From: Octopus bimaculoides
Lineage: Eukaryota
Direction of reading: 5' to 3'
Assembly: GCF_001194135.2 (NCBI RefSeq)
Contig: NC_068982.1
Coordinates: 118,755,429 to 118,793,366, forward strand
DNA: 37,938 bases
Shown: in pieces, positions 1,279-34,485 of the stretch
Layout of the letters: each line of letters opens with the position of its first letter
How positions within the stretch are numbered: position 1 is the first letter of the stretch
The notes under the pieces: model-generated
Told to the model about the DNA's origin: nothing
Database searches by the model: none
What the model saw: the letters and a program-made list of their open reading frames with translations, nothing else
Program-made: the position numbers and the translations under genes

Positions 1279-1583
1279 GGATGCGCAATGGCCCAGTGGT
1301 TAGGGCAGCGGGCTCGTGGTCATAGGATCGTGGTTTCGATTCCCACACCGAGCGTTGTGAGTGTTTATTGAGCGAAAACACCTAAAGCTCCACGAGGCTC
1401 CGGCAGGGGATGGTGGCGAACCCTGCTGTACTCTTTTGCCACAACTTTCTCTCACTATTTCTTCCTGTTTCTGTTGTGCCTGTAATTCAAAGGGTCAGCC
1501 TTGTCACCCTGTGTCACGCTGAATATCCCCGAGAACTACGTTAACAGTACACGTGTCTGTGGAGTGCTCAGCCACTTGCATGT
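1279..1583 (+). mobile_element. tRNA-derived SINE, family A, 3'-truncated
   Basis: A box TGGCCCAGTGG (1289-1299) and B box GGTTTCGATTCC (1332-1343). The body from ~1355 closely matches the copy at 22123-22350 and stops after CCACTTGCATG, where that copy continues. Confidence 0.9.
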
Positions 1584-9597: not shown

Positions 9598-9708
9598 AGG
9601 AACAAACACACGCACACATAACATCACTCCCCTCATGCAGCCCGTACAAAAATTATCCTCATTGTTGCTATAGAGCAACAAATACATATTTCATATCCTG
9701 TACTCAAT

Positions 9709-11139
9709 CATGATGGGATTAAGTCTCATTTAGAACTCCTATGCCTAAATGCACGAAATTTGTGCAACAAAGTGCACCTTTTCGACTCCTACATGAAGCG
9801 TATTGAGCACGATTTCATCGCAGTCACAGAATCTGTGTTGGTGCTTTTAGCATAGCTGGTTACAACTTGTTTTGCGAAGACCGTTCTTATAGTCGTAGAG
9901 GTGGCGTGATGATCTACATTCGGTCAAACATTTCTGCAATTCCTTGTGATGATCTGAACAAATCGCAACACGAGGTACTCTTTGGCTAACTAGTCATAAA
10001 CGTGTCAACACTGATACCTGGAGTTGTCTATCGCCGACTAAATTACCATCAACACACACAAATTTTTGAAATACCCAGGGACGCATCTAGGAAAACAGCC
10101 ACTTATTTTTTTCATTGCTGGTGATATCAATTACCCTGAAATTGATTGGAAAGCTTCTCGTTGACGGCAAAATGCAGACGATTTCCTCGGTGTAGTACTG
10201 GATTCAAACTAGTCCCAAGTAGTCACTTTCCACACAAGACGTAATAATACTGTGGACCTGTTCTTTACCACCACTCTTGAAGCTGTCATTAGTGTTACAA
10301 CCAAAGAACCTCTAGGCGACTCCGATCATGCTATGATCATTGCCAATATGTCCCTTATAGTCATAAACAAAAAGCACCAAGACCTAAAAATCAATCGCTT
10401 TAAAAAGCAGACTGGAACTACTACTGTAATGCGTTACAACGCCCAAACCGGCTTCAGTTTCACGATTCTCCTTTGGGAGGAAAAAGCCCCGCCTTTACAT
10501 ACTCCCTCAACAATGCCAGTCTCAAGAAGGCTGCTAGTGAATGTCATCTGGGTATTATTGTAAACAGCGATCTCCGTTGGATAAACCACATCTCTAAGAT
10601 TGTAGGTGTCCTAGCATCACTCACTAAGACCTTTGTAAACCGCTCTCCAGCTATCTGTTTAAAATTGTATTCGACAATAGTACTTTCGCACTTTTCATAC
10701 CCATTCTGGAACCCCTACCTTGCACAGCATATGGATCTCCTGGAAACTGTTCAGCAACATGGAACAAAATGAATACCCACCGTCAGGAATCTATCATACT
10801 CTGAACGTTTAGCATTTGACTTGGTAGACACCACAAGATTATCAACGATCTTCCCAACAACCTTGCACACCGTTTTGAATTCCATATGTCAAACACTCGT
10901 GGACATGCTTACAAAATCCCACAAACAACACAGAACCCATGATTTTCGGAAACAATTTTTCACACTTAGAATTGTTCATGCATGGAATAAACTACCCGTA
11001 TCAGTCGTTAGCTGTCGGAACACTACATCCTTCAAAACTTCCATGCCTCTTGAAATCCTCCAATACTACACCTGATAGCATTTTTTCTTTCTCATTTGCA
11101 GCGCACCTGAGCACTATATACAACAAATTCTTTCATACC
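9709..11139 (+). mobile_element. Decayed CR1/L2-group LINE: APE endonuclease plus post-RT C-terminus, RT core missing
   Basis: Frameshifted translation gives APE motifs LCLNARNL, IAVTES, GGVMIYIR, GDINYPEIDW, NNTVDLFF, LGDSDHAMI, then KADW. It runs directly into LGIIVNSDLRW, CLKLYSTIV..PFWNPYL..DLLETVQ and KQFFTLRIVHAWNKLP, typical CR1-group C-terminal motifs. Multiple stops and frameshifts. Confidence 0.85.
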
Positions 11140-11214: not shown

Positions 11215-11395
11215 NNNNNNNNNNNNNNNNNNNNNNNNNNNNNNNNNNNNNNNNNNNNNNNNNNNNNNNNNNNNNNNNNNNNNNNNNNNNNNNNNNNNNN
11301 NNNNNNNNNNNNNNNNNNNNNNNNNNNNNNNNNNNNNNNNNNNNNNNNNNNNNNATATATATATATATTGTATAAATATATAAGTATGTATGTGT

Positions 11396-14007: not shown

Positions 14008-14094
14008 NNNNNNNNNNNNNNNNNNNNNNNNNNNNNNNNNNNNNNNNNNNNNNNNNNNNNNNNNNNNNNNNNNNNNNNNNNNNNNNNNNNNNNN
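14008..14094. other. Assembly gap flanked by (AT)n
   Basis: N run. Confidence 1.
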
Positions 14095-15049: not shown

Positions 15050-15920
15050 CAGGGTGGGTGACAATTAAGCAAATAATAAAAGTTGTTAATGAAATCAATA
15101 TTCCTTTTACAAATTTATTGAAATCAACGATACATGTTCTTTACTACATGAGAAAATGAAGGTAAATCTTCATATTTCAACGTAACCAACGGTGGCGGCA
15201 ACCAGGTTCCTCAAACGGTCAGGGATGGAATGAACAACCTTCTGAAGGACGTCGTCTGGGATATCACTGAGAACCTCCTGAATCCGTGTCTTCAAGTCCT
15301 CCAGTGCGTGAGGCTTTATCTTGTACACCTCTTCATTTGTATAACCCCATAGTTAAAAATCACATGGAGTGAGATATTGGCTTCTCGGAGTTCTGGAATT
15401 CTGCGTTCACAGTCTTACGGTTTTAGTTCCTTCACATAATGGGGTTTCCACGGACGAAAATTTAATTCTTTATGCAACACCGTACTTTCATGAGCTGCTT
15501 GACGAGTTGATTTTAGTGGGCTGCAGTTAAACATTTACTGCACCTTTGCAACATTCTTCGCTGATCGGGATGAATTTAAGTGGTCACATCTTGCATAGTT
15601 CACAGAACCCGTGGTCAACAGCTTCGCATGAAAACTTTGTATTGTCTCCGGGAGTAGTGTTGTATGCTTAACTTTCCATGCACGCCATCATCTCTGAACC
15701 AAAAACATCTGAATTCCACACTTCAAAGCGCGCTGCTATTTTAGTTTGCTTCTGAACACTCAAGCGGCCGGCCATCTGGAAAATAAGAAATAAGAAGCAA
15801 AATAATAAAAGCTAAAAAAATACCCATTAGTATTGTCTGTTTAAAAATGTTTTCGTCATGACTTCAGTGATACTAAAAATTCTATAATGTCTAATGCCTA
15901 ATTACTTTCCACCCACTCTC
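15050..15920 (-). mobile_element. Tc1/mariner DNA transposon, internally deleted and non-autonomous
   Basis: Minus-strand N-terminus from ATG at 15775 (MAGRLSVQKQTKIAARFEVWNS). C-terminus PRSQYLTPCDF*LWGYTNEEVYKIKPHALEDLKTRIQEVL..VEI* matches the PRSPDLTPCDFFLWG-type motif. Degenerate TIRs CAGGGTGGGTGAC-AATTAAGCA and rc GAGAGTGGGTGGAAAGTAATTAGGCA, with TA at 15048-49 and 15921-22. Confidence 0.85.
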
Positions 15921-16583: not shown

Positions 16584-16783
16584 AAGGCGGCGAATTGGCA
16601 GAATCGTTAGCACGACGGGCGAAATGCTTACCGGTATTTTGTCCGTCTTTACGTTCTGAGTTCAAATTCCTCCGAGGTCGACTTTACCTTTCATCTTTTT
16701 TGGATGAACAAAATAAGCACCAGTTGAGGACTTGGGTCTTGTCCCCTCTCCCTTATATCAAAATTTGTAAACATTATTATTAT
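16584..16783 (+). mobile_element. SINE family B, copy 2
   Basis: A-box-like TGGCAGAATCG (16596-16606), B box GAGTTCAAATTCC (16658-16670), (ATT)n tail. Confidence 0.85.
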
Positions 16784-16919: not shown

Positions 16920-17162
16920 AAGGCAGTGAGCTGGAAGAGTCATTAGAACGCCGGAGAAAATGCTTAGTGGAATTTCTTCCGTCTTTACCTTCTAAATTCA
17001 AATTCCGCCGCGGTCGACTATGCCTTTCATTCTTGCAGCGTCAATAAACTAAGTGCCAGTTGCGCACTGCGGTCGATATTATCGACTAGCTTCCTCCCGA
17101 AAATTTCAGGCCATGTGCCTATACTAGAAAGGACGACGACTACTACTACTACTACTACTACT
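16920..17162 (+). mobile_element. SINE family B, copy 4, most complete, (ACT)n tail
   Basis: Full head and body, 3' end AAATTTCAGGCCATGTGCCTATACTAGAAAGG, then (ACT)n at ~17139-17162. Confidence 0.85.
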
Positions 17163-18525: not shown

Positions 18526-19490
18526 NNNNNNNNNNNNNNNNNNNNNNNNNNNNNNNNNNNNNNNNNNNNNNNNNNNNNNNNNNNNNNNNNNNNNNNNNNN
18601 NNNNNNNNNNNNNNNNNNNNNNNNNNNNNNNNNNNNNNNNNNNNNNNNNNNNNNNNNNNNNNNNNNNNNNNNNNNNNNNNNNNNNNNNNNNNNNNNNNNN
18701 NNNNNNNNNNNNNNNNNNNNNNNNNNNNNNNNNNNNNNNNNNNNNNNNNNNNNNNNNNNNNNNNNNNNNNNNNNNNNNNNNNNNNNNNNNNNNNNNNNNN
18801 NNNNNNNNNNNNNNNNNNNNNNNNNNNNNNNNNNNNNNNNNNNNNNNNNNNNNNNNNNNNNNNNNNNNNNNNNNNNNNNNNNNNNNNNNNNNNNNNNNNN
18901 NNNNNNNNNNNNNNNNNNNNNNNNNNNNNNNNNNNNNNNNNNNNNNNNNNNNNNNNNNNNNNNNNNNNNNNNNNNNNNNNNNNNNNNNNNNNNNNNNNNN
19001 NNNNNNNNNNNNNNNNNNNNNNNNNNNNNNNNNNNNNNNNNNNNNNNNNNNNNNNNNNNNNNNNNNNNNNNNNNNNNNNNNNNNNNNNNNNNNNNNNNNN
19101 NNNNNNNNNNNNNNNNNNNNNNNNNNNNNNNNNNNNNNNNNNNNNNNNNNNNNNNNNNNNNNNNNNNNNNNNNNNNNNNNNNNNNNNNNNNNNNNNNNNN
19201 NNNNNNNNNNNNNNNNNNNNNNNNNNNNNNNNNNNNNNNNNNNNNNNNNNNNNNNNNNNNNNNNNNNNNNNNNNNNNNNNNNNNNNNNNNNNNNNNNNNN
19301 NNNNNNNNNNNNNNNNNNNNNNNNNNNNNNNNNNNNNNNNNNNNNNNNNNNNNNNNNNNNNNNNNNNNNNNNNNNNNNNNNNNNNNNNNNNNNNNNNNNN
19401 NNNNNNNNNNNNNNNNNNNNNNNNNNNNNNNNNNNNNNNNNNNNNNNNNNNNNNNNNNNNNNNNNNNNNNNNNNNNNNNNNNNNNNNNNN
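18526..19490. other. Assembly gap (965 N)
   Basis: N run after (AT)n. Source of the 343-354 aa X-filled ORFs. Confidence 1.
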
Positions 19491-19750
19491 AATAGGTAGA
19501 TAGATGTACATATATTATATATATTTATATGTATACATACACACACACAAACGAGCGTCTAGTAACACAATCTGTATCACGTCCTCACGTTGTTTTTTGT
19601 CTTTTTCCTTTTTTGAACTTATATACATACATATACTTACCGTTAACAAAAGTTGGAATGCGTGGTATTCAGTGAATGAAAACTGAATTAAATATTACAA
19701 AACGTGTACGTTTTATAATATTTAATGCATGTTTCATTTATATATACACA

Positions 19751-20417
19751 CAAGGTCTGGTCAATATTTTCCGGATTGTTGTCATAGTATCGAAGCTAAA
19801 ACACGCTGAGTAAAGCTGCTGGGTAAAGTCCGACCTTGGTCACTGCTGTGCATGTGCACTAAGTTTTAACGTTCTAGCTCCACTTCCGCTGATTACAGCA
19901 GTGCTTCGAAGCAACGTGTGTTACGTGTGATCGTCGCATTGACCATGCAAGAGAAAGTTGTCATAGTGATACCTGTTCAGTGGCCTACGCAAAGTTTCAA
20001 AAACTGTATGGATAGGAGTGTATGAGATGCGTATCTGCCAAGTTTGTGCTAAACCTGCTTTCAGATGACCAAAAAAATACTCGAGTTCTAATTGCGCAAA
20101 ATCTCCTTGTTAGTGGCGAGAACGATGAAGACTTTTTCAAAACTTTACGTAGGACTCTGAGCATGTATCGCCACGCTTTTGGCAAAATTTGATGCAGATT
20201 CTCTGCTCAACATTCTCTGTCATGTGCAATTCGGCGAGCAGATGCTATACACATTACTTCAAAGCACTACTGCAAACAGCGGAAGTGAGCTGGAACGTTG
20301 AATCGTAGTGCGCATGCACAGCAGAGATCAAGGTCAACATTTGCCCAGCAGATTTTGTCTGCGTGCTTCAGCTTTGTTACTATAGCAACAGTCCAGAAAC
20401 TTATTGATCAGATCACG
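19751..20417 (+). mobile_element. Mariner deletion derivative with ~170-bp terminal inverted repeats
   Basis: 19751-~19921 and ~20247-20417 are reverse complements at roughly 75-80% identity by manual alignment. Internal frame DTCSVAYAKFQKLYG*ECMRCVSAKFVLNLLSDDQKNTRVLIAQNLL..ENDEDFFKTL resembles a mariner HTH start fused to the WVPxxL-linker region. TA at 20418-19, CA on the left. Confidence 0.85.
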
Positions 20418-20454
20418 TATATATATATATAATATTTGCGTAATATATGTATAT

Positions 20455-22071: not shown

Positions 22072-22122
22072 ATGTGTGTGTGTGTGCGTGTGTATGTGTG
22101 TGTGTATGTGTANNNNNNNNNN

Positions 22123-22429
22123 GTTGTGAGTGTTTGTTTATTGAGCGAAAACACCTAAAGCTCCACGAGGCTCCGACAGAGGATGGTGGCGAACCCTGCT
22201 CTACTCCTTCATCACAACTTTCTCTCACTCTTTCTTCCTGTTTCTGTTGCACCTGTATTTCAAAGGGCCAGCCTTGTCACACTGTGTCACGCTGAATATC
22301 CCCGAGAACTACGTAAAGAGTACACGTGTCTGTGGAGTGCTCAATCACTTGCACGTTAATTTCACGAGCCGGCTGTTCCGTTGATCAGATCAACTGGAAC
22401 CCTCGACGTCGCAAGCGACAAAGTGCCAA
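22123..22429 (+). mobile_element. SINE family A, second copy, 5' end lost in a gap
   Basis: Closely matches 1355-1583 and extends to the 3' tail CAACTGGAACCCTCGACGTCGCAAGCGACAAAGTGCCAA. Confidence 0.9.
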
Positions 22430-22599
22430 GAATATATATATACATGCATGTATTATGTATGTATGTATGTATATATTTATGTGTGTGTGAGTGTACTCGT
22501 ATATGCACCTAACGTCCGCAGATGCAAACATCAAGTAAGCCAAAAAATATATATATATGCAATTTAAGATATCTAGATGTAGAATAACCAGATTTTCAG

Positions 22600-22700
22600 T
22601 TTCTCCTTTCTGACTACTTTTTGTTTTACTAAATAACAATATCTCACTGTTTTCTTTGCAGGTGAGTACCTTACAATTCTACTAAAAAAATTCGTAAGTA
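22600..22700 (+). other. Juxtaposed 3'/5' splice site (TTTGCAG|GTGAGT), candidate recursive-splicing point
   Basis: No AG from 22600-22659, T/C-rich tract, branch-like TACTAAAT (22627-34) and CTGAC (22610-14), AG at 22660-61, GTGAGT at 22662, second donor GTAAGT at 22694. Motif evidence only. Confidence 0.45.
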
Positions 22701-23112
22701 CAAATATATTTTTGATAATATTTACTTCCATGGAATTCATTTGGAAAACATATGTAATTATCATTCTACACATCCGTTTTAAGTAATGCCCGGAATTATG
22801 TCTTCCAAGAGTAGAAGAAGAAAATATAAATATGTGTGCGTTTGTGTGTGTGTACCAATTTGAGTGGCAAAATACAGAAAATATAGGAGAATATAATTGT
22901 CTAACAGGATGGACATTTCGACTCAAGGCAGAATTAAAAGCATACTTTTATGCAGCTTTATTTGTTTTATCGTTTGTTACATTGTTTATATTTTATTTAC
23001 ATTTTGTCTGAAACATGCATATACATGAGTATCTTTTACAATGGATGCGTACGAACGTAGGTATATATGTACGTATGTATGTATGTGCGTATGTGTGCAT
23101 GTCTCTATTTAT

Positions 23113-24232: not shown

Positions 24233-24904
24233 NNNNNNNNNNNNNNNNNNNNNNNNNNNNNNNNNNNNNNNNNNNNNNNNNNNNNNNNNNNNNNNNNNNN
24301 NNNNNNNNNNNNNNNNNNNNNNNNNNNNNNNNNNNNNNNNNNNNNNNNNNNNNNNNNNNNNNNNNNNNNNNNNNNNNNNNNNNNNNNNNNNNNNNNNNNN
24401 NNNNNNNNNNNNNNNNNNNNNNNNNNNNNNNNNNNNNNNNNNNNNNNNNNNNNNNNNNNNNNNNNNNNNNNNNNNNNNNNNNNNNNNNNNNNNNNNNNNN
24501 NNNNNNNNNNNNNNNNNNNNNNNNNNNNNNNNNNNNNNNNNNNNNNNNNNNNNNNNNNNNNNNNNNNNNNNNNNNNNNNNNNNNNNNNNNNNNNNNNNNN
24601 NNNNNNNNNNNNNNNNNNNNNNNNNNNNNNNNNNNNNNNNNNNNNNNNNNNNNNNNNNNNNNNNNNNNNNNNNNNNNNNNNNNNNNNNNNNNNNNNNNNN
24701 NNNNNNNNNNNNNNNNNNNNNNNNNNNNNNNNNNNNNNNNNNNNNNNNNNNNNNNNNNNNNNNNNNNNNNNNNNNNNNNNNNNNNNNNNNNNNNNNNNNN
24801 NNNNNNNNNNNNNNNNNNNNNNNNNNNNNNNNNNNNNNNNNNNNNNNNNNNNNNNNNNNNNNNNNNNNNNNNNNNNNNNNNNNNNNNNNNNNNNNNNNNN
24901 NNNN

Positions 24905-25573: not shown

Positions 25574-27249
25574 NNNNNNNNNNNNNNNNNNNNNNNNNNN
25601 NNNNNNNNNNNNNNNNNNNNNNNNNNNNNNNNNNNNNNNNNNNNNNNNNNNNNNNNNNNNNNNNNNNNNNNNNNNNNNNNNNNNNNNNNNNNNNNNNNNN
25701 NNNNNNNNNNNNNNNNNNNNNNNNNNNNNNNNNNNNNNNNNNNNNNNNNNNNNNNNNNNNNNNNNNNNNNNNNNNNNNNNNNNNNNNNNNNNNNNNNNNN
25801 NNNNNNNNNNNNNNNNNNNNNNNNNNNNNNNNNNNNNNNNNNNNNNNNNNNNNNNNNNNNNNNNNNNNNNNNNNNNNNNNNNNNNNNNNNNNNNNNNNNN
25901 NNNNNNNNNNNNNNNNNNNNNNNNNNNNNNNNNNNNNNNNNNNNNNNNNNNNNNNNNNNNNNNNNNNNNNNNNNNNNNNNNNNNNNNNNNNNNNNNNNNN
26001 NNNNNNNNNNNNNNNNNNNNNNNNNNNNNNNNNNNNNNNNNNNNNNNNNNNNNNNNNNNNNNNNNNNNNNNNNNNNNNNNNNNNNNNNNNNNNNNNNNNN
26101 NNNNNNNNNNNNNNNNNNNATATATATACAGATATAGGGCAGGGAATCGTCAATTAGTAATAGAATTAATAATTAACAATTTGTAGTTTGGAATCAGTAG
26201 TTCTTTGACTGCTATTTCTAAATTTTCAGTATGTTGGAGAAGCAACTCAAGCTAATCCCTGTATATTTATGATATATATATATATTAAAAATTATAGATT
26301 ATAGCTTATGCATTATAAAGATGAATTAATATACAAATATCAAAATTATATAGACAAGTGTATAATGTGGAATACAAAATATACGATATAAAATATAAGA
26401 TATAACTTCAGATATACTCAGTAGACTATTTTTTCTTTATTTGAATTATCTGAAATAAAAATACCCGTATATCTATTAATGCCCAAAACTGAATTATATA
26501 ATATATATATACACGCTCACACCTCACACAAACATATACATATGCTTGCATAGCTATTATAATCATATATAAATTGTATGTTTGTATGTATGTGCGGTGT
26601 GTGTGCGCGCGCGTAGTGTGTGTCTATGCTAGCATGTGTGTATGTGAATATTATCCTGGAAAATGACAACCGTAGATGTATACTATTACATATTTAAAAG
26701 TCGTAAATATCATGTTATATTTAATTTTCTTTATTATTTAATACCAATGCGTAGTGTATTGTGTCAAAACAATAATTGAAGCATCAACAAGCTCGCTATT
26801 GACACACTTGTTTTTCATTGAAAGAATATAACATAAATGTTGAGAAACACTATGATGTTAATCTTAACAAACTGAAGAATTGGCAAACAGGCGAGCTATT
26901 ATGAGATCGCTTTCTCGGCTGAATTAAAGCAACACGTCTCCAGATATATTGCTGAACCTCTTTAAAATAGATCACATTAGAGGAAATATATCAGGAGTGA
27001 AGTTGGTTTCAACAATTAATACAACGGCTGAATTGTTGAAAAATGCGGAAGAGATAAGCACACTTTCAAAACCTGGAGCATCAAATGACATACTTTATCA
27101 AAGTTTAATCACTGTTACCACTTGCAGCAAACAAAAGTAAAAAAATGATTTACTTGTTCATAATTACATTTAAACATGAGTTAAAAGTAATCTAATTACA
27201 AGATACGCACTACAATGATCGACTGAATAAAATCGCATACATACATTCA

Positions 27250-27575: not shown

Positions 27576-27747
27576 NNNNNNNNNNNNNNNNNNNNNNNNN
27601 NNNNNNNNNNNNNNNNNNNNNNNNNNNNNNNNNNNNNNNNNNNNNNNNNNNNNNNNNNNNNNNNNNNNNNNNNNNNNNNNNNNNNNNNNNNNNNNNNNNN
27701 NNNNNNNNNNNNNNNNNNNNNNNNNNNNNNNNNNNNNNNNNNNNNNN
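27576..27747. other. Assembly gap after (TA)n
   Basis: N run. Confidence 1.
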
Positions 27748-29654
27748 CCGTGAAACAAGTTCGGCAACAAGCACCCCACTTTTTTTTTTTTTTATGGCTT
27801 GTTCTTGTGGTGTAAATCGATTTTTTCAAAAGACTGAAAACTGGATAAAACCTGCCAGAACTGATCGAAAATAATGTAAACAAACCACTTCCACCATCAT
27901 TAAATTCTAACCAAATGTAACGGATTTAACAGGGACAACTGTAATATATTCAATTTAGAAAAATCCTGAACTTGAGTGCACTGAGTGAAAATCTTCTCTA
28001 CCGCAAGCAATTTCTGAACGAATAGAGATCTAATGAACTGTCTGGAAACTATACACGCGGAAAAACGGAAACACCGGAAGATAAAAAAGAAGGTGTAGAA
28101 ATATACAAGACTAATAGAAAGAACTATATTTTGGTGGATGACTTTAGGAAAGAATTTGGCCCTCTTAAGTTGGACATTTCTAACAAATATATATGAGGGC
28201 CTCATCTCCCCGACGCCATGAGTCCGGGAAAAAGAAGATGAAATGGGACTCCCACCTCAGACACCGATTACAATCTAAGTCTTCTTATGGCTGTTCACGT
28301 AGGATGCATAAATGTGAGTGGCCTGGCGTCGAGCTAGAGACAAGGACGTTTCCTAAATGACGCCAGGTCACGATGTTTAGATGTTATTGTTGCCACTGAA
28401 ATCCGGTTAAAAGGGCCAAGATATCTGCTCCCGCTCTTGAAAGGCTACGAGGGCGGGGTGTTGGACATGCTTAAAAGAAACCAAGTTCCAGTGGAAAGTT
28501 AATTTTTTTTAATTTGTTTTTTTTATGTAGAAGGTAGGCTGGTCGTTTTAGACCTGACATTCAGTTGTGGTAAGGAAATCAGGCTGGTCGCTGTTTATGC
28601 ACACAATTCGTGTCGGACAGATTATTATCGAGATTTGGACAAGTTTCTAGGTACATCATATTCATTAGTTGTGGTTAGGAGACTTTAACACTATCCTCGA
28701 TGCACGCGTGGATAGTGTTGGCTCAAATACTGATAGGAGACCTAACATTGGCTTCCGGGATCTACTAAGTCACCTTCAGCTAATAGATCCCTACAGACTA
28801 GAATTACTGGACGCTCCATTGTGGATATGGTCAAATAGCGACGGATCTTCTAGGTCTCACATAGATAGAATTTTATTAGAAAGTTAGATAAAGATATAGT
28901 TATGTATCCACAATATCACCTGGTCAGTTACTGTAACCAAAAGATAGTCACTTGTAAACTGTACCTAGATAAGTTATGTAGTAAGGGATCCCGCTATTGT
29001 AAACTCAATAAATCCTTTTTGGCGATTTAGGAGTACAGGAGCCGGATTAAATTATTAATACAGAGGGCGTTGACCGGTTGCATTATTAACAACAAATGGT
29101 TTTACATGCTCAAAAGAGCCATTAAATTTGAGTCTATTTGATATAGTGCAGTTTTAGTGACTAGAGAGCGTAGGAAGGAAATTGAATTAGTTAAGGCCCT
29201 AGAGGAAGTCATGAGAACTGGCGACGCAACCCAGTGAAGAGACTGGAGTTAAACCAGCACCACTGTATCGTCAGAGCTAGATTTCGCTCAATGGGGAGCG
29301 AGGGAATCAAGGCCGCTGGATGAGCACGTGTTGTTAAGTCTCAACGTGGAAGCGATTCCATAATTTGATCTTTGGTGAATTCGCAGGGTGAGTTGATAAA
29401 CGAACCCTAAGAAATGTGTCGGACTTTTCAGGAGCACTTCGCCCAGCTTTTCAGGGTGAGCGATGGACCGGATAGGAGGACAAACCTTACGGACTTCCTC
29501 GCCGGGATGCCGCGTCTCTCGGGGTAGGATTCGGAGAGTTGTGAAGGGTCGATCACACCCGAGGAAGTGATTGGGGCCATAGCTGACTGCGGCGGTGGTA
29601 AGGTGCTGGGACTCGATGGTCTACATTACAAGCTATATAAAGGTATGCCAGACT
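27748..29654 (+). mobile_element. Decayed Tx1/L1-clade LINE: possible ORF1 tail, ORF2 APE endonuclease and linker, truncated at the RT start
   Basis: ORF2 start ATG at 28287 (MAVHVGCINVSGL), then VIVATEIRL, GRLVVLDL, LVAVYAHN, GDFNTILDARVD, WIWSNSDGSSRSHIDRIL, RYCKLNKSFL, and GLDGLHYKLYKGMP (KSPGPDG-like). The 5' boundary and ORF1 assignment are less certain. Confidence 0.8.
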
Positions 29655-31979
29655 CTCTGTCTGTCGTATCTTCAACATCCCTATCAAAGTGACCATGCAT
29701 TCTTTTCTTTACCCACCTATTTTCAGTTCATTCGTTTTCAATTTCTTGTATAGTGCTTTATCTTTGCAATTTTTCATCGTACACAAGCCTGACCTTCCTA
29801 CTTCTAATATTAGCGGTTCTGAGGCATTTTTTACATACCATGCAATGTTGTTTTCTTCTGCTCTTCGCCCTATTTTTCTTGGTTCATAGTCTGTCTGTTT
29901 CACTTTTTGAGTGAGTGACCCATATCTAGTTAGCGACTTCCTTGTCTTTCTGTCTAAGCTGTTTAGTTTGTCGGCTGTCCATACGATTACCCTTGCCCGA
30001 TATCTAAGGAGTGAAACCATCCAGGTGTTGATAGCTTCGATCTTATTCCGTCCGTTTAATTTCGACTTAAGGATCAGTCTCAATCTGCGTAAGTACTCAA
30101 CCTTAAATTTTTCTTTTATTTCTTTCTACATTAATTTATCCATTTCCCAAATCTTCAAGTACTTGTAGCCCGTCTCTTCTATCTGCTTCATAACCTTCCT
30201 CGACGGTATTGTTAGTCCGTCCATACATTTGATTTTGCCTCTCTTCAATACCAACACACCACACTTTCTTAGTCCGAAGTCCATTCTGATATCAGCCCTG
30301 AAGGTATACACCCTATCAACGAGAGAACTGACTTGGGCTTCATCTTTACCATAAAGTTTGGGGTTGTCCATGAATAACAAACGTTTACATTTTTTGTTAG
30401 CGGCTTTTGAATACATACCCAGCTTTTGCTTTCCTCAGAATGAGTGTCAGTGGTATCAAGCACTGTACAAAGATCAATGGGAGCAGGCAGTCCCCCTTGG
30501 AAGATGCCTCTCCTTATTTCTATTGTCCCTAAACCTCTTCCGCATACTGTCAGGTCCGTCCTCCAATTTGCCATACTTTTTCCAAGCAATCGCTCAACAT
30601 TCGCTGCAATCTCAAACAAGTTCATACACTCCATAATCCAAGAACGTGGGATCATATCGTACGCCTTACGATAATCGATCCATGTCATGTCTAAATTACT
30701 TTTCCTCCTCTAGCAGTCTCTAAGTACAGTTTTATCTATCAGCAGTTGAATTCTTGGTACCTCTGCACTTACGTTTGCAACCCTTCTGCTCATGTGGCAG
30801 GACTCCATTTTTTCTAGATGTCCGTACATTGACTCTGCGAATATTCCAGTCAATAATTTCGACATAAGTGGCAAACAGGATATCAACCTGTAATTGTCTA
30901 CCTTATTGCCTGTTTCGATGTTTTTTAGGCACAGTACAGACCTACCCAATGTCAACCACTCTGGTGTTGTTTGGTCGTCATTTAACAAGGTGTTGAGTTT
31001 TCCTTCACTTTCCTAACTGAAATGACTATTTCTGCCTCTTTTGGACAGACTGCTGCTTGTTTCAGTTCTTGCAACTATTCAGCATCCTTCTTGTGCTCCT
31101 TGGCTTTGATGCAGATGTCACTCCAAAACATTTGTCTTCCAATGTTAACAGGTATCAACTTTTCATTTGTACATCCTCCATTTATTTCTTTATAGAATCT
31201 CTTCTAATCTACTCTGCATAACCTATTCTGTTGCTTACCGTTCGTTCTTTGTTCGTATCTTACTATCTTTGCTTTCTTTGCAGCCAGGCGCTGTTTCAGT
31301 TCCTCCACTAGTACTTTCAGGCCCTTTCTTTCAGTATTATACTTCCTTTTCAGCGCCCTGTATTTTTGTTCGCTTTTAAGCTGCCCTTTCTCTTTTCGGT
31401 CTAACACAGAGATTTCATTCGAGAGCATGTCTAATCCTGGATTCTACTTTTCCACCATGGATCTTTTCTTTTGTCACTCCCATTATGTTTCTTTTTCTTG
31501 ACATCAACACCCACATTTTCTGTTACAACAATACTTGCTGCCTTGATCAAATTATTTGTTTATGTGATGTTGTTTGTTCTGATGTATTTCAGAATTTCAT
31601 TGACATTTTTCGCTAAATAATGTCGCTATTGTTCTCCTGTATTCTACGACAGAATAAATTATGTCGTAGATTGTCTTTTGTTCATCTGTCATGTCGCTAT
31701 TAGTTTTATCGTCTGCTTTTAGATCATCTATATGTCTCTCAACAAGTAACCTACAACTGCTCATTTCCTGTGCTATGAGATCACTCTTATTAGCAAGAAC
31801 TGTATTCACAATATACAGCATTCACAGTATACCACCGTTATTCACAATATTTTGTTTTTTCTTTGTCACTCATATGAGGTAGCGACTATCAGGTTGCGCA
31901 ATTACCAGTGTTTTTATTGTGACACCATCACTAGATGTATCATTATGAGCCCATAAGGCGACTCCACCCGTTTCCTTTA
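29647..31979 (-). mobile_element. Decayed Dong/R4-clade non-LTR retrotransposon, 3' (RLE) end missing
   Basis: Minus-strand fragments: ILKYIRTNNIT..NLIKAAS, DPWWKSRI, NYRLISCLPLMSKLLTG, WIDYRKAYDMIPRSWI, IRRGIFQG, LLFMDNPKLYG, DFGLRKC, GYKYL, ILKSKLNGRNKIEAINTW, LDRKTRK, MHGHFDRD. No APE domain. These motifs are characteristic of R4/Dong elements. Confidence 0.85.
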
Positions 31980-34072: not shown

Positions 34073-34242
34073 NNNNNNNNNNNNNNNNNNNNNNNNNNNN
34101 NNNNNNNNNNNNNNNNNNNNNNNNNNNNNNNNNNNNNNNNNNNNNNNNNNNNNNNNNNNNNNNNNNNNNNNNNNNNNNNNNNNNNNNNNNNNNNNNNNNN
34201 NNNNNNNNNNNNNNNNNNNNNNNNNNNNNNNNNNNNNNNNNN

Positions 34243-34320
<78 letters not shown>

Positions 34321-34485
34321 ACGAGCGTGCGCATACGCACATACACATATATAAACATACTTATATATTTGTGTGTGTGTGTGTGTGTGTGTGTCTGTGT
34401 GCATCTGTGTGTGTATCTATGCATGTGTGTTGGTAGGTAGTTAGGTAAGTAGCGAGGTAGGAAGGTAGGTGTGTAGGTAGGAAGG
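34025..34485. repeat. (TG)n, N gap 34073-34242, (CA)n, (TG)n, degenerate (GTAG)n
   Basis: Read directly. Confidence 0.95.

What the first reader, a model, noticed from the sequence alone, without database searches (positions are those of the whole stretch)
22600..22700. Candidate recursive-splicing ratchet point with a 32-nt cryptic RS-exon
Seen: a 60-nt AG-free T/C-rich tract with branch-like motifs ends in CTCACTGTTTTCTTTGCAG, followed immediately by the consensus donor GTGAGT (22662). A second consensus donor, GTAAGT, lies at 22694, defining a 32-nt frame-shifting exon. The alternative 62-nt exon 22600-22661 has stops in all three frames, and the site is not inside any recognised repeat. 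Known: Drosophila ratchet points and vertebrate RS-sites are AG|GURAGU junctions in long introns followed by a short cryptic exon used for exon definition. Inference: this window may lie in a long plus-strand intron that is removed stepwise. I am not aware of recursive splicing having been characterised in cephalopods.
Basis: partly seen in the sequence, partly recalled or inferred. Interest (0 to 1): 0.7.

Follow-up and report, generated by a model that had tools for sequence, protein, structure and literature searches.

The report
Candidate recursive splice site, octopus DNA
A near-perfect "acceptor-next-to-donor" splice signal, followed 32 bases later by a second donor, really is present in what looks like octopus non-coding DNA and is rarer than chance predicts for this window, but nothing available here shows that the strand is transcribed or the site used, so it remains an untested candidate of a known kind.

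Summary
A 60-nt AG-free, 73% pyrimidine tract ends in TTTGCAG|GTGAGT (junction 22661/22662), and GTAAGT lies 32 nt downstream.

The bare 8-mer AGGTRAGT occurs at chance frequency. The full juxtaposed signal does not. It scores 22.0 bits against 12.1 for the next best of 180 AGGT sites on both strands. Null models expect about 0.001 such sites per window, so roughly 50-120 per 2.7-Gb genome, or 2-5 once the second donor is required.

Every sequence-level feature of a fly or vertebrate recursive splice site is met. The defining functional features could not be tested: position in a long sense-strand intron, conservation, and RNA evidence.

- No coding exon, host gene or strand asymmetry was found in the 38 kb.
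- The only protein hit is a SINE-derived segment of an Octopus bimaculoides gene model.
- The surroundings are rich in transposon fragments and microsatellites.

My estimates:
- Used recursive splice site: about 0.4.
- Chance look-alike: about 0.35.
- Ordinary non-coding exon edge: about 0.15.

If real, it is a new member of a known kind. Interest is modest.

The parts
22600..22659 (+). AG-free pyrimidine-rich tract (AG exclusion zone plus polypyrimidine tract) upstream of the acceptor
   Evidence: 60 nt with no AG, 44/60 pyrimidines and TT at positions -5/-6. The acceptor score of 12.6 bits ranks 2nd of 1795 AGs on +.
22610..22614 (+). Branch-point candidate CTGAC (A at 22613, 48 nt from the acceptor G)
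   Evidence: yUnAy match. Weak evidence, because 1.2 matches are expected by chance.
22627..22633 (+). Branch-point candidate TACTAAA, a near match to UACUAAC, about 29 nt upstream of the acceptor
   Evidence: Read directly from the sequence.
22643..22647 (+). Branch-point candidate CTCAC (A at 22646, 15 nt from the acceptor G)
   Evidence: yUnAy match.
22660..22667 (+). Juxtaposed acceptor and donor, AG|GTGAGT. This is the candidate ratchet point, with the junction between 22661 and 22662.
   Evidence: Joint score is 22.0 bits against 12.1 for the next best of 180 AGGT sites. In genomic context, 10 of 11 positions match the U1-complementary consensus.
22662..22693 (+). 32-nt putative cryptic RS-exon (frame-shifting; stops in 2 of 3 frames)
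22694..22699 (+). Downstream consensus donor GTAAGT, which would define the RS-exon
   Evidence: It matches 7 of 11 positions of the U1-complementary consensus, so it is weaker than the ratchet-point donor. The chance of a GTRAGT within 10-100 nt is about 0.04.
22123..22433 (+). Context only: a SINE-like interspersed repeat ending about 170 nt upstream of the tract. The site lies outside it.
   Evidence: 92% identical to 1362-1580. Its translation matches the N-terminus of the O. bimaculoides model A0A0L8HIS0.
22444..22486 (.). Context only: (ATGT)n microsatellite between the SINE and the site
   Evidence: Tandem Repeats Finder.

Best explanation
The + strand at 22600-22699 carries a complete, near-consensus set of spliceosomal signals arranged as a recursive splice site (ratchet point) with a short cryptic RS-exon.

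Shown here:
- The anatomy: branch-like motifs, a 60-nt AG-free pyrimidine tract with TT at -5/-6, CAG|GTGAGT, a 32-nt segment, then GTAAGT.
- Its rarity under null models.

Inferred mechanism, if the + strand is transcribed as part of an intron:
1. The intron would exceed 37.9 kb, because no coding exon was detected in the window.
2. U2AF and U2 at the acceptor, and U1 at GTAAGT (22694), define the 32-nt segment as a tiny exon.
3. The upstream exon is ligated to 22662, removing at least 22.6 kb as a first lariat.
4. Ligation recreates a 5' splice site (exon end|GTGAGT). It is stronger than the downstream GTAAGT: 10 of 11 against 7 of 11 consensus positions in genomic context.
5. That recreated site is used next. 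The 32 nt and the remaining 15 kb or more are removed, leaving no trace in the mRNA.
6. Occasional use of the downstream donor would instead insert a 32-nt frame-shifting exon that has stops in two of three frames, exposing the transcript to nonsense-mediated decay.
For: - The sequence is exactly as described.
- The joint acceptor-plus-donor score of 22.0 bits is far above the next best, 12.1, among 180 AGGT sites on both strands. The acceptor ranks 2nd of 1795 AGs.
- Null expectation is 0.0007-0.0025 such sites per window, multiplied by 0.04 for the second donor. The independent-bases model is calibrated against observed counts at 8-12 bits.
- TT at -5/-6, as in 99.5% of Drosophila ratchet points (bioRxiv 10.1101/006163).
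- A short, out-of-frame cryptic exon with its own donor, and a ratchet-point donor stronger than that donor, as described for Drosophila (PMC8605326).
- No coding exon was detected in the 38 kb, which is compatible with a very long intron.
- All five invertebrates tested by Shepard et al. show 4- to 22-fold sense-strand enrichment of such motifs in large introns (PMC2773006).
Against: - Nothing shows that the + strand is transcribed or that the window is intronic.
- No host gene or exon was found.
- Base-composition skews after masking are about zero on both strands: TA +0.006, GC -0.004.
- The window is dense in microsatellites, assembly gaps and transposon remnants. In squid, simple repeats and DNA transposons correlate with low gene density (PMC9068888).
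- 32 nt is at the short end for an RS-exon, which is typically about 50 nt.
- Conservation, the strongest discriminator in flies and humans, could not be tested.
- About 50-120 core sites of this quality are expected by chance in a 2.7-Gb genome.
- The scoring matrices are generic, not cephalopod-trained.
- I could not check whether the stretch belongs to a multi-copy repeat elsewhere in the genome.
Confidence: 0.4

Rival explanations
1. It is a fortuitous look-alike. An AT- and T-rich stretch of untranscribed DNA, or DNA transcribed only in antisense, happens to read as a strong acceptor abutting a consensus donor. It is never used by the spliceosome.
For: - AGGTRAGT itself is at chance frequency, and the other copy in the window is plainly meaningless.
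- Its component features are individually common. AG-free gaps of 60 nt or more make up 4% of gaps, 2% of 60-nt windows are as pyrimidine-rich, and yUnAy matches are about as expected.
- Null models predict about 50-120 equally good core sites per 2.7-Gb genome.
- No gene, exon or strand asymmetry was found.
- The setting is repeat-rich and probably gene-poor.
- In vertebrates such motifs are barely enriched on the sense strand, 1.0-1.5x.
- Only about 0.2% of splice-scored intronic AGGT sites in human have RNA support.
Against: - Per window the joint pattern has p of about 0.001, and about 4e-5 with the second consensus donor.
- It exceeds the runner-up by 10 bits.
- With the second donor, only about 2-5 such sites are expected by chance genome-wide.
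Confidence: 0.35
2. It is an ordinary exon edge of an unannotated transcript. One option is that GTGAGT at 22662 is simply the donor of a non-coding first or UTR/lncRNA exon ending at 22661, whose 3' end happens to be pyrimidine-rich. The other is that 22662-22693 is a conventional alternatively spliced, poison-type 32-nt microexon that merely begins with GTGAGT.
For: - CAG|GTGAGT is a perfect conventional donor, and the acceptor is strong.
- Stops in all frames of 22600-22661 fit a non-coding exon.
- Annotated exons that begin with a donor-like sequence are common in mammals (PMC6224609 abstract; PMC8605326).
Against: - No protein in 5.8 billion matches any open frame here.
- The 32 nt is not a multiple of three and has stops in two frames.
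- A 60-nt AG-free pyrimidine tract is what lies upstream of an acceptor. It is not typical of exon ends.
- The alternative acceptor at 22599 has a poor pyrimidine tract.
Confidence: 0.15
3. The stretch is part of an unrecognised interspersed repeat whose consensus carries cryptic splice signals. Its rarity under random-sequence models would then be misleading, and many copies would exist.
For: The window is a mosaic of SINE, LINE and mariner-like remnants. The site lies between a SINE with its microsatellite tail and further microsatellites.
Against: There is no second copy of 22540-22800 within the 38 kb. Homology to the neighbouring SINE ends at about 22433. No protein-domain or RNA-family match covers it.
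Confidence: 0.08

Closest known systems
Drosophila intronic ratchet points with cryptic RS-exons (Ubx, kuz, Bx; Hatton 1998, Burnette 2005, Duff 2015, Joseph 2018/2021)
   Same: - Juxtaposed (Y)nCAG|GTRAGT with a prominent pyrimidine tract and TT at -5/-6.
- A short, out-of-frame cryptic exon closed by its own donor.
- A ratchet-point donor stronger than the RS-exon donor, predicting '0-nt' recursion.
- At least 15-22 kb of exon-free sequence on each side.
   Different: - The organism is a cephalopod (lophotrochozoan), where no such site has been described.
- The RS-exon is 32 nt against about 50 nt typical.
- Conservation, host intron and use are unknown here, whereas fly sites are defined by RNA evidence and ultraconservation.
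Vertebrate RS-sites and RS-exons in long neuronal genes (Sibley 2015; Blazquez 2018; Bass & Salzberg 2026)
   Same: - A YAG|GT core followed by a competing downstream donor.
- Inclusion would give a frame-shifted transcript sensitive to nonsense-mediated decay.
- The genome is large and rich in SINE and LINE elements, as in vertebrates.
   Different: Most vertebrate sites have weaker motifs, are identified only from RNA, and show little motif enrichment on the sense strand (1.0-1.5x). This site is near-consensus.
Intronic pseudo-exons and decoy splice sites
   Same: Strong acceptor and donor signals in non-coding DNA with no coding potential.
   Different: A decoy pseudo-exon does not need a donor immediately abutting the acceptor. 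The AG|GTGAGT juxtaposition is the feature specific to recursion.

Membership tests
Recursive splice site (ratchet point) with cryptic RS-exon | Acceptor immediately followed by a donor: YAG|GTRAGT | tested here: met
   CAG|GTGAGT at 22659-22667. Donor part scores 9.4 bits, close to the maximum of the matrix used.
Recursive splice site (ratchet point) with cryptic RS-exon | Prominent polypyrimidine tract with TT at -5/-6 and an AG exclusion zone | tested here: met
   15 of 18 pyrimidines upstream of the AG, TT at -5/-6 and 60 nt AG-free. The acceptor ranks 2nd of 1795 AGs. Criterion taken from bioRxiv 10.1101/006163.
Recursive splice site (ratchet point) with cryptic RS-exon | Downstream donor defining a short RS-exon (about 50 nt, generally out of frame) | tested here: met
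   GTAAGT at 22694. The exon is 32 nt, not a multiple of 3, with stops in two frames. This is at the short end of the range given in PMC8605326.
Recursive splice site (ratchet point) with cryptic RS-exon | Regenerated ratchet-point donor at least as strong as the RS-exon donor (for a fully skipped cryptic exon) | tested here: inconclusive
   10 of 11 against 7 of 11 consensus positions in genomic context. The true exonic half of the regenerated donor depends on the unknown upstream exon.
Recursive splice site (ratchet point) with cryptic RS-exon | Lies inside a long intron, on the sense strand of the host gene | tested here: inconclusive
   No coding exon or gene was detected on either strand. 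Two composite searches of 4925 and 4647 residues gave only a SINE-derived hit. Strand skews are about zero. These results are compatible with either a >38-kb intron or intergenic DNA.
Recursive splice site (ratchet point) with cryptic RS-exon | Core motif conserved in orthologous introns while the flanks drift | not testable with these tools
   No cephalopod genomic collection is available. Exact-protein look-ups and a metagenome DNA scan returned nothing.
Recursive splice site (ratchet point) with cryptic RS-exon | RNA evidence: exon-to-site junction reads, sawtooth coverage, lariats to and from the site | not testable with these tools
   No RNA-seq access.
Ordinary coding cassette exon or microexon | Open reading frame continuous with a known protein, with length usually a multiple of 3 | tested here: not met
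   32 nt, with stops in 2 of 3 frames. The 62-nt alternative has stops in all frames. No protein match.
Interspersed-repeat-borne cryptic splice site | The stretch recurs as multiple diverged copies | tested here: inconclusive
   No other copy within the 38-kb window, and the site is outside the adjacent SINE. Genome-wide copy number is not testable here.

The most novel reading that the evidence does not exclude
The site is a working ratchet point in an octopus intron longer than 38 kb. That would be the first recursive splice site documented in a cephalopod or any lophotrochozoan. It would imply that stepwise removal of giant introns through near-consensus AG|GTRAGT sites with cryptic RS-exons is a pan-bilaterian solution, one also used in the greatly expanded genomes of coleoids.
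Probability: 0.38. Interest if true: 0.45.

Novelty: new member of a known kind. Interest (0 to 1): 0.3.

Why it matters
Recursive splicing is established in flies and vertebrates and has been inferred from motif enrichment in other insects and sea urchin. It has not been examined in molluscs. Coleoid cephalopods combine very large, repeat-rich genomes and long neuronal genes with an invertebrate ancestry. Whether they subdivide long introns in the fly manner (strong, conserved ratchet points) or the vertebrate manner (many weak sites) is an open question, though a modest one.

One validated site would show that the mechanism exists there. It would also give a template for a genome-wide search, and such sites bear on gene annotation and on interpreting intronic variants. 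On its own, a single unvalidated motif match changes little.

Tried and rejected
**Finding the host gene through coding exons**
- I ranked all stop-to-stop frames by protein-like composition.
- I searched two composites, of 4925 and 4647 residues, against 5.8 billion proteins.
- The only hit was an O. bimaculoides dynein heavy-chain model whose N-terminus is SINE-derived. It matches the window only at the two SINE copies, so it is not the host gene.

**Retrieving the locus or its orthologues**
- Exact-protein look-ups of 11 window ORFs, including two that span the site, and of the dynein model found nothing on record.
- An exact 24-mer scan of metagenome contigs gave no match.
- The genome, viral, phage, plasmid and E. 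coli collections hold no cephalopod DNA and were not scanned.

**Other checks**
- Rfam and tRNA scans of the window gave nothing.
- Pfam on the ORF spanning the site gave nothing.
- Strand inference from base skews after masking repeats gave about zero, with confidence intervals spanning zero. AATAAA and ATTAAA counts were uninformative.
- Transposon orientation is mixed, so it does not indicate a strand.

**Considered and dropped**
- A sense-versus-antisense motif enrichment test on real octopus introns. The only reachable octopus protein had no locus on record, and genes over 100 kb come without DNA, so the test would have been underpowered.
- Reading 22600-22661 as a coding exon. It has stops in all frames and no AG inside from which to start.

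Full report
**What is there**

On the + strand, 22600-22659 is a 60-nt stretch without a single AG. It has 44 pyrimidines (31 T, 13 C) and ends in ...CTCACTGTTTTCTTTGC. AG follows at 22660-22661 and is abutted by GTGAGT at 22662-22667. A second consensus donor, GTAAGT, lies at 22694-22699, which leaves a 32-nt segment, 22662-22693.
- The 62-nt alternative exon 22600-22661 has stops in all three frames.
- The 32-nt segment has stops in two frames and one open frame.
- Branch-like motifs lie 48, about 29 and 15 nt upstream of the acceptor (CTGAC, TACTAAA, CTCAC). Three yUnAy matches against 1.2 expected is not informative.

**Is it more than chance?**

The 8-mer AGGTRAGT is not. It occurs twice on + and never on -, against 1-2 expected per window. 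The other copy, at 34443, sits in GGTA-rich low complexity with no pyrimidine tract. AG-free gaps of 60 nt or more (78 of 1801) and equally pyrimidine-rich 60-mers (2%) are also common.

The combination is different. I used an approximate generic metazoan matrix, covering acceptor positions -20..-1 and donor positions +1..+6, written from memory and not cephalopod-trained.
- The site scores 22.0 bits, against 12.1 for the next best of 180 AGGT sites on both strands.
- Its acceptor alone ranks 2nd of 1795 AGs on +, above all 1956 on -.
- An independent-bases model reproduces the observed counts at 8-12 bits: 9.8 against 7, 4.1 against 4, and 1.6 against 2. It predicts 0.0007 sites of at least 22 bits per window.
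- Order-3 Markov simulations give 0.0013-0.0025, that is 3 events in 1900 windows.
- A second GTRAGT 10-100 nt downstream has probability 0.04.

The pattern is therefore unexpected for one window, at about 1e-3, or about 4e-5 with the second donor. In a 2.7-Gb genome, chance still yields some 50-120 core sites and 2-5 with the second donor.

**Surroundings**

The window looks like a draft assembly of octopus DNA. It has nine N gaps (2772 N in all) and is dense in microsatellites.
- A SINE-like element occurs twice, at about 1354-1583 and 22123-22433, with 92% identity over 219 nt.
- Its translation is the only thing in the window that matches any of 5.8 billion proteins. The match is the N-terminus of an Octopus bimaculoides dynein heavy-chain model, A0A0L8HIS0. 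That model matches the window nowhere else.
- A degenerate reverse transcriptase lies on the - strand at about 30129-31012 (RVT_1, E = 3e-7).
- By eye, there are LINE endonuclease/RT remnants on + at about 9600-11100 and 28300-28900.
- A mariner-like remnant is bracketed by inverted repeats about 225 nt long, 19736-19960 and 20208-20433.
- The candidate site lies about 170 nt beyond the SINE and its (ATGT)n tail. It is in no tandem repeat and has no second copy in the window.

**Is the window a plus-strand intron?**

This is the crux, and I could not settle it.
- Frames with protein-like composition are all transposon- or SINE-derived.
- Two composite searches covered the 80 best frames of 40 aa or more and the 131 best remaining frames of 25 aa or more, on both strands. 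They found no host protein.
- The 38 kb therefore contains no recognisable coding exon, which fits either an intron over 38 kb or intergenic DNA.
- After masking repeats, strand skews are nil (TA +0.006, GC -0.004, with confidence intervals spanning zero). Poly(A)-signal counts show no consistent bias.
- Transposon orientations are mixed.
- In squid, simple repeats and DNA transposons correlate negatively with gene density, and long gene deserts exist (PMC9068888). That leans slightly towards a gene-poor setting.
- Exact-protein look-ups and a metagenome scan returned no independent copy of the locus, so conservation is untested.
- Rfam and tRNA scans were empty.

**Comparison with what is known**

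Drosophila ratchet points are juxtaposed acceptor and donor sites with a prominent pyrimidine tract.
- 99.5% have TT at -5/-6, they are highly conserved, and they sit in the longest introns (bioRxiv 10.1101/006163; PMC6110457).
- They are recognised through a short (about 50 nt), poorly conserved, usually out-of-frame cryptic RS-exon with its own donor. The stronger regenerated donor normally wins, so the exon is skipped (PMC8605326).
- The candidate meets all of these sequence criteria: TT at -5/-6, a 32-nt out-of-frame exon, and 10 of 11 against 7 of 11 consensus positions for the two donors.

Calibration from other genomes:
- Shepard et al. (PMC2773006) measured about 0.07-0.12 such motifs per 100 kb on complementary strands in all animals.
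- On the sense strand of large introns they found 0.5-2.2 per 100 kb in five invertebrates (sea urchin 8x, fly 22x), but only 1.0-1.5x in vertebrates.
- In human, only about 3,000 of 1.67 million splice-scored intronic AGGT loci have strong RNA support (bioRxiv 10.64898/2026.09.10.750672).
- No held paper contains both 'recursive splicing' and 'octopus'. The single paper with 'cephalopod' is, by its title and abstract, about neuronal microexons.

**Weighing**

The posterior depends on two things. One is how many strong recursive sites octopus has, which is unknown. The other is how many equally good chance sites exist, about 2-5 with the second donor and more if hidden repeats inflate the tail.
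- If octopus resembles the tested invertebrates, a site of this quality is probably real.
- If it resembles vertebrates, the odds are roughly even or worse.
- If the locus is intergenic or antisense, the site is meaningless.

| Explanation | Estimate |
|---|---|
| Used recursive splice site | about 0.40 |
| Chance look-alike | about 0.35 |
| Ordinary edge of an unannotated non-coding or poison exon | about 0.15 |
| Repeat-borne signal | about 0.08 |

These are judgements, not computed posteriors.

**Mechanism if real (inferred)**
1. The 32-nt segment is defined as an exon by the strong acceptor and GTAAGT at 22694.
2. The upstream exon is ligated to 22662, releasing a lariat of at least 22.6 kb.
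3. The regenerated exon|GTGAGT donor is used to remove the 32 nt together with the remaining 15 kb or more.
4. Rare use of GTAAGT instead would give a transcript carrying a frame-shifting 32-nt exon with stops in two of three frames.

**Verdict**

If true, it is a new member of a known kind in an unexamined phylum. Placing the locus in an annotated assembly, checking total RNA-seq junctions, and aligning other octopods would each settle it quickly.

Noticed in passing
window 1354-1583 and 22123-22433 (+): Two copies of a SINE-like element, 92% identical over 219 nt. Its translation forms the first ~115 residues of UniProt A0A0L8HIS0, an O. bimaculoides dynein heavy-chain model. The N-terminus of that public gene model therefore looks like a repeat-derived annotation artefact. 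ARAGORN and Rfam detect no tRNA-like head.
   Followed up: partly
window ~29700-31560 (-), best 30129-31012: Degenerate non-LTR retrotransposon reverse transcriptase, broken by frameshifts and stops (Pfam RVT_1, E = 3e-7). No close relative was found among 5.8 billion proteins at E <= 1e-3.
   Followed up: partly
window 9622-11072 (+) and 28338-28884 (+): Frames that by eye resemble LINE apurinic-endonuclease and RT segments (for example ...GDINYPEIDW..., ...LWLGDFNTILD...). Pfam gave no significant hit, so this rests on visual resemblance only.
   Followed up: partly
window 19736-19960 / 20208-20433, with ORF 20016-20189 (+); also 15173-15352 (-): Inverted repeats about 225 nt long, 77% identical, bracket a short frame resembling a mariner/Tc1 transposase N-terminus. 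This is a likely decayed DNA transposon of about 700 bp. A separate frame at 15173-15352 (-) resembles a transposase C-terminus. Neither was confirmed by Pfam.
   Followed up: partly
window N runs: 591-600, 11215-11354, 14008-14094, 18526-19490, 22113-22122, 24233-24904, 25574-26119, 27576-27747, 34073-34242: Most of the nine assembly gaps are visibly flanked by di- or tetranucleotide microsatellites ((TG)n, (CT)n, (AT)n, (CATA)n). This suggests a short-read draft assembly that broke at simple repeats. True gap lengths are unknown, so distances across them are uncertain.
   Followed up: no
window 34443-34450 (+): The only other AGGTRAGT in the window (AGGTAAGT) lies inside GGTA/GGTAGG low-complexity sequence with no pyrimidine tract (8 of 18 pyrimidines). 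It serves as an internal example of a meaningless motif match.
   Followed up: yes
window 16584-16697 and 16920-17034 (+): A direct repeat of about 115 nt at 78% identity, 336 nt apart. It is probably another short interspersed or locally duplicated element. It is unrelated to the SINE next to the site.
   Followed up: no
window 22669-22690 (-): On the opposite strand of the same 100 nt, TTTTTTTAG is followed 7 nt later by GTAAGG. This is a reminder that weaker splice-like pairs arise easily in AT-rich DNA.
   Followed up: no
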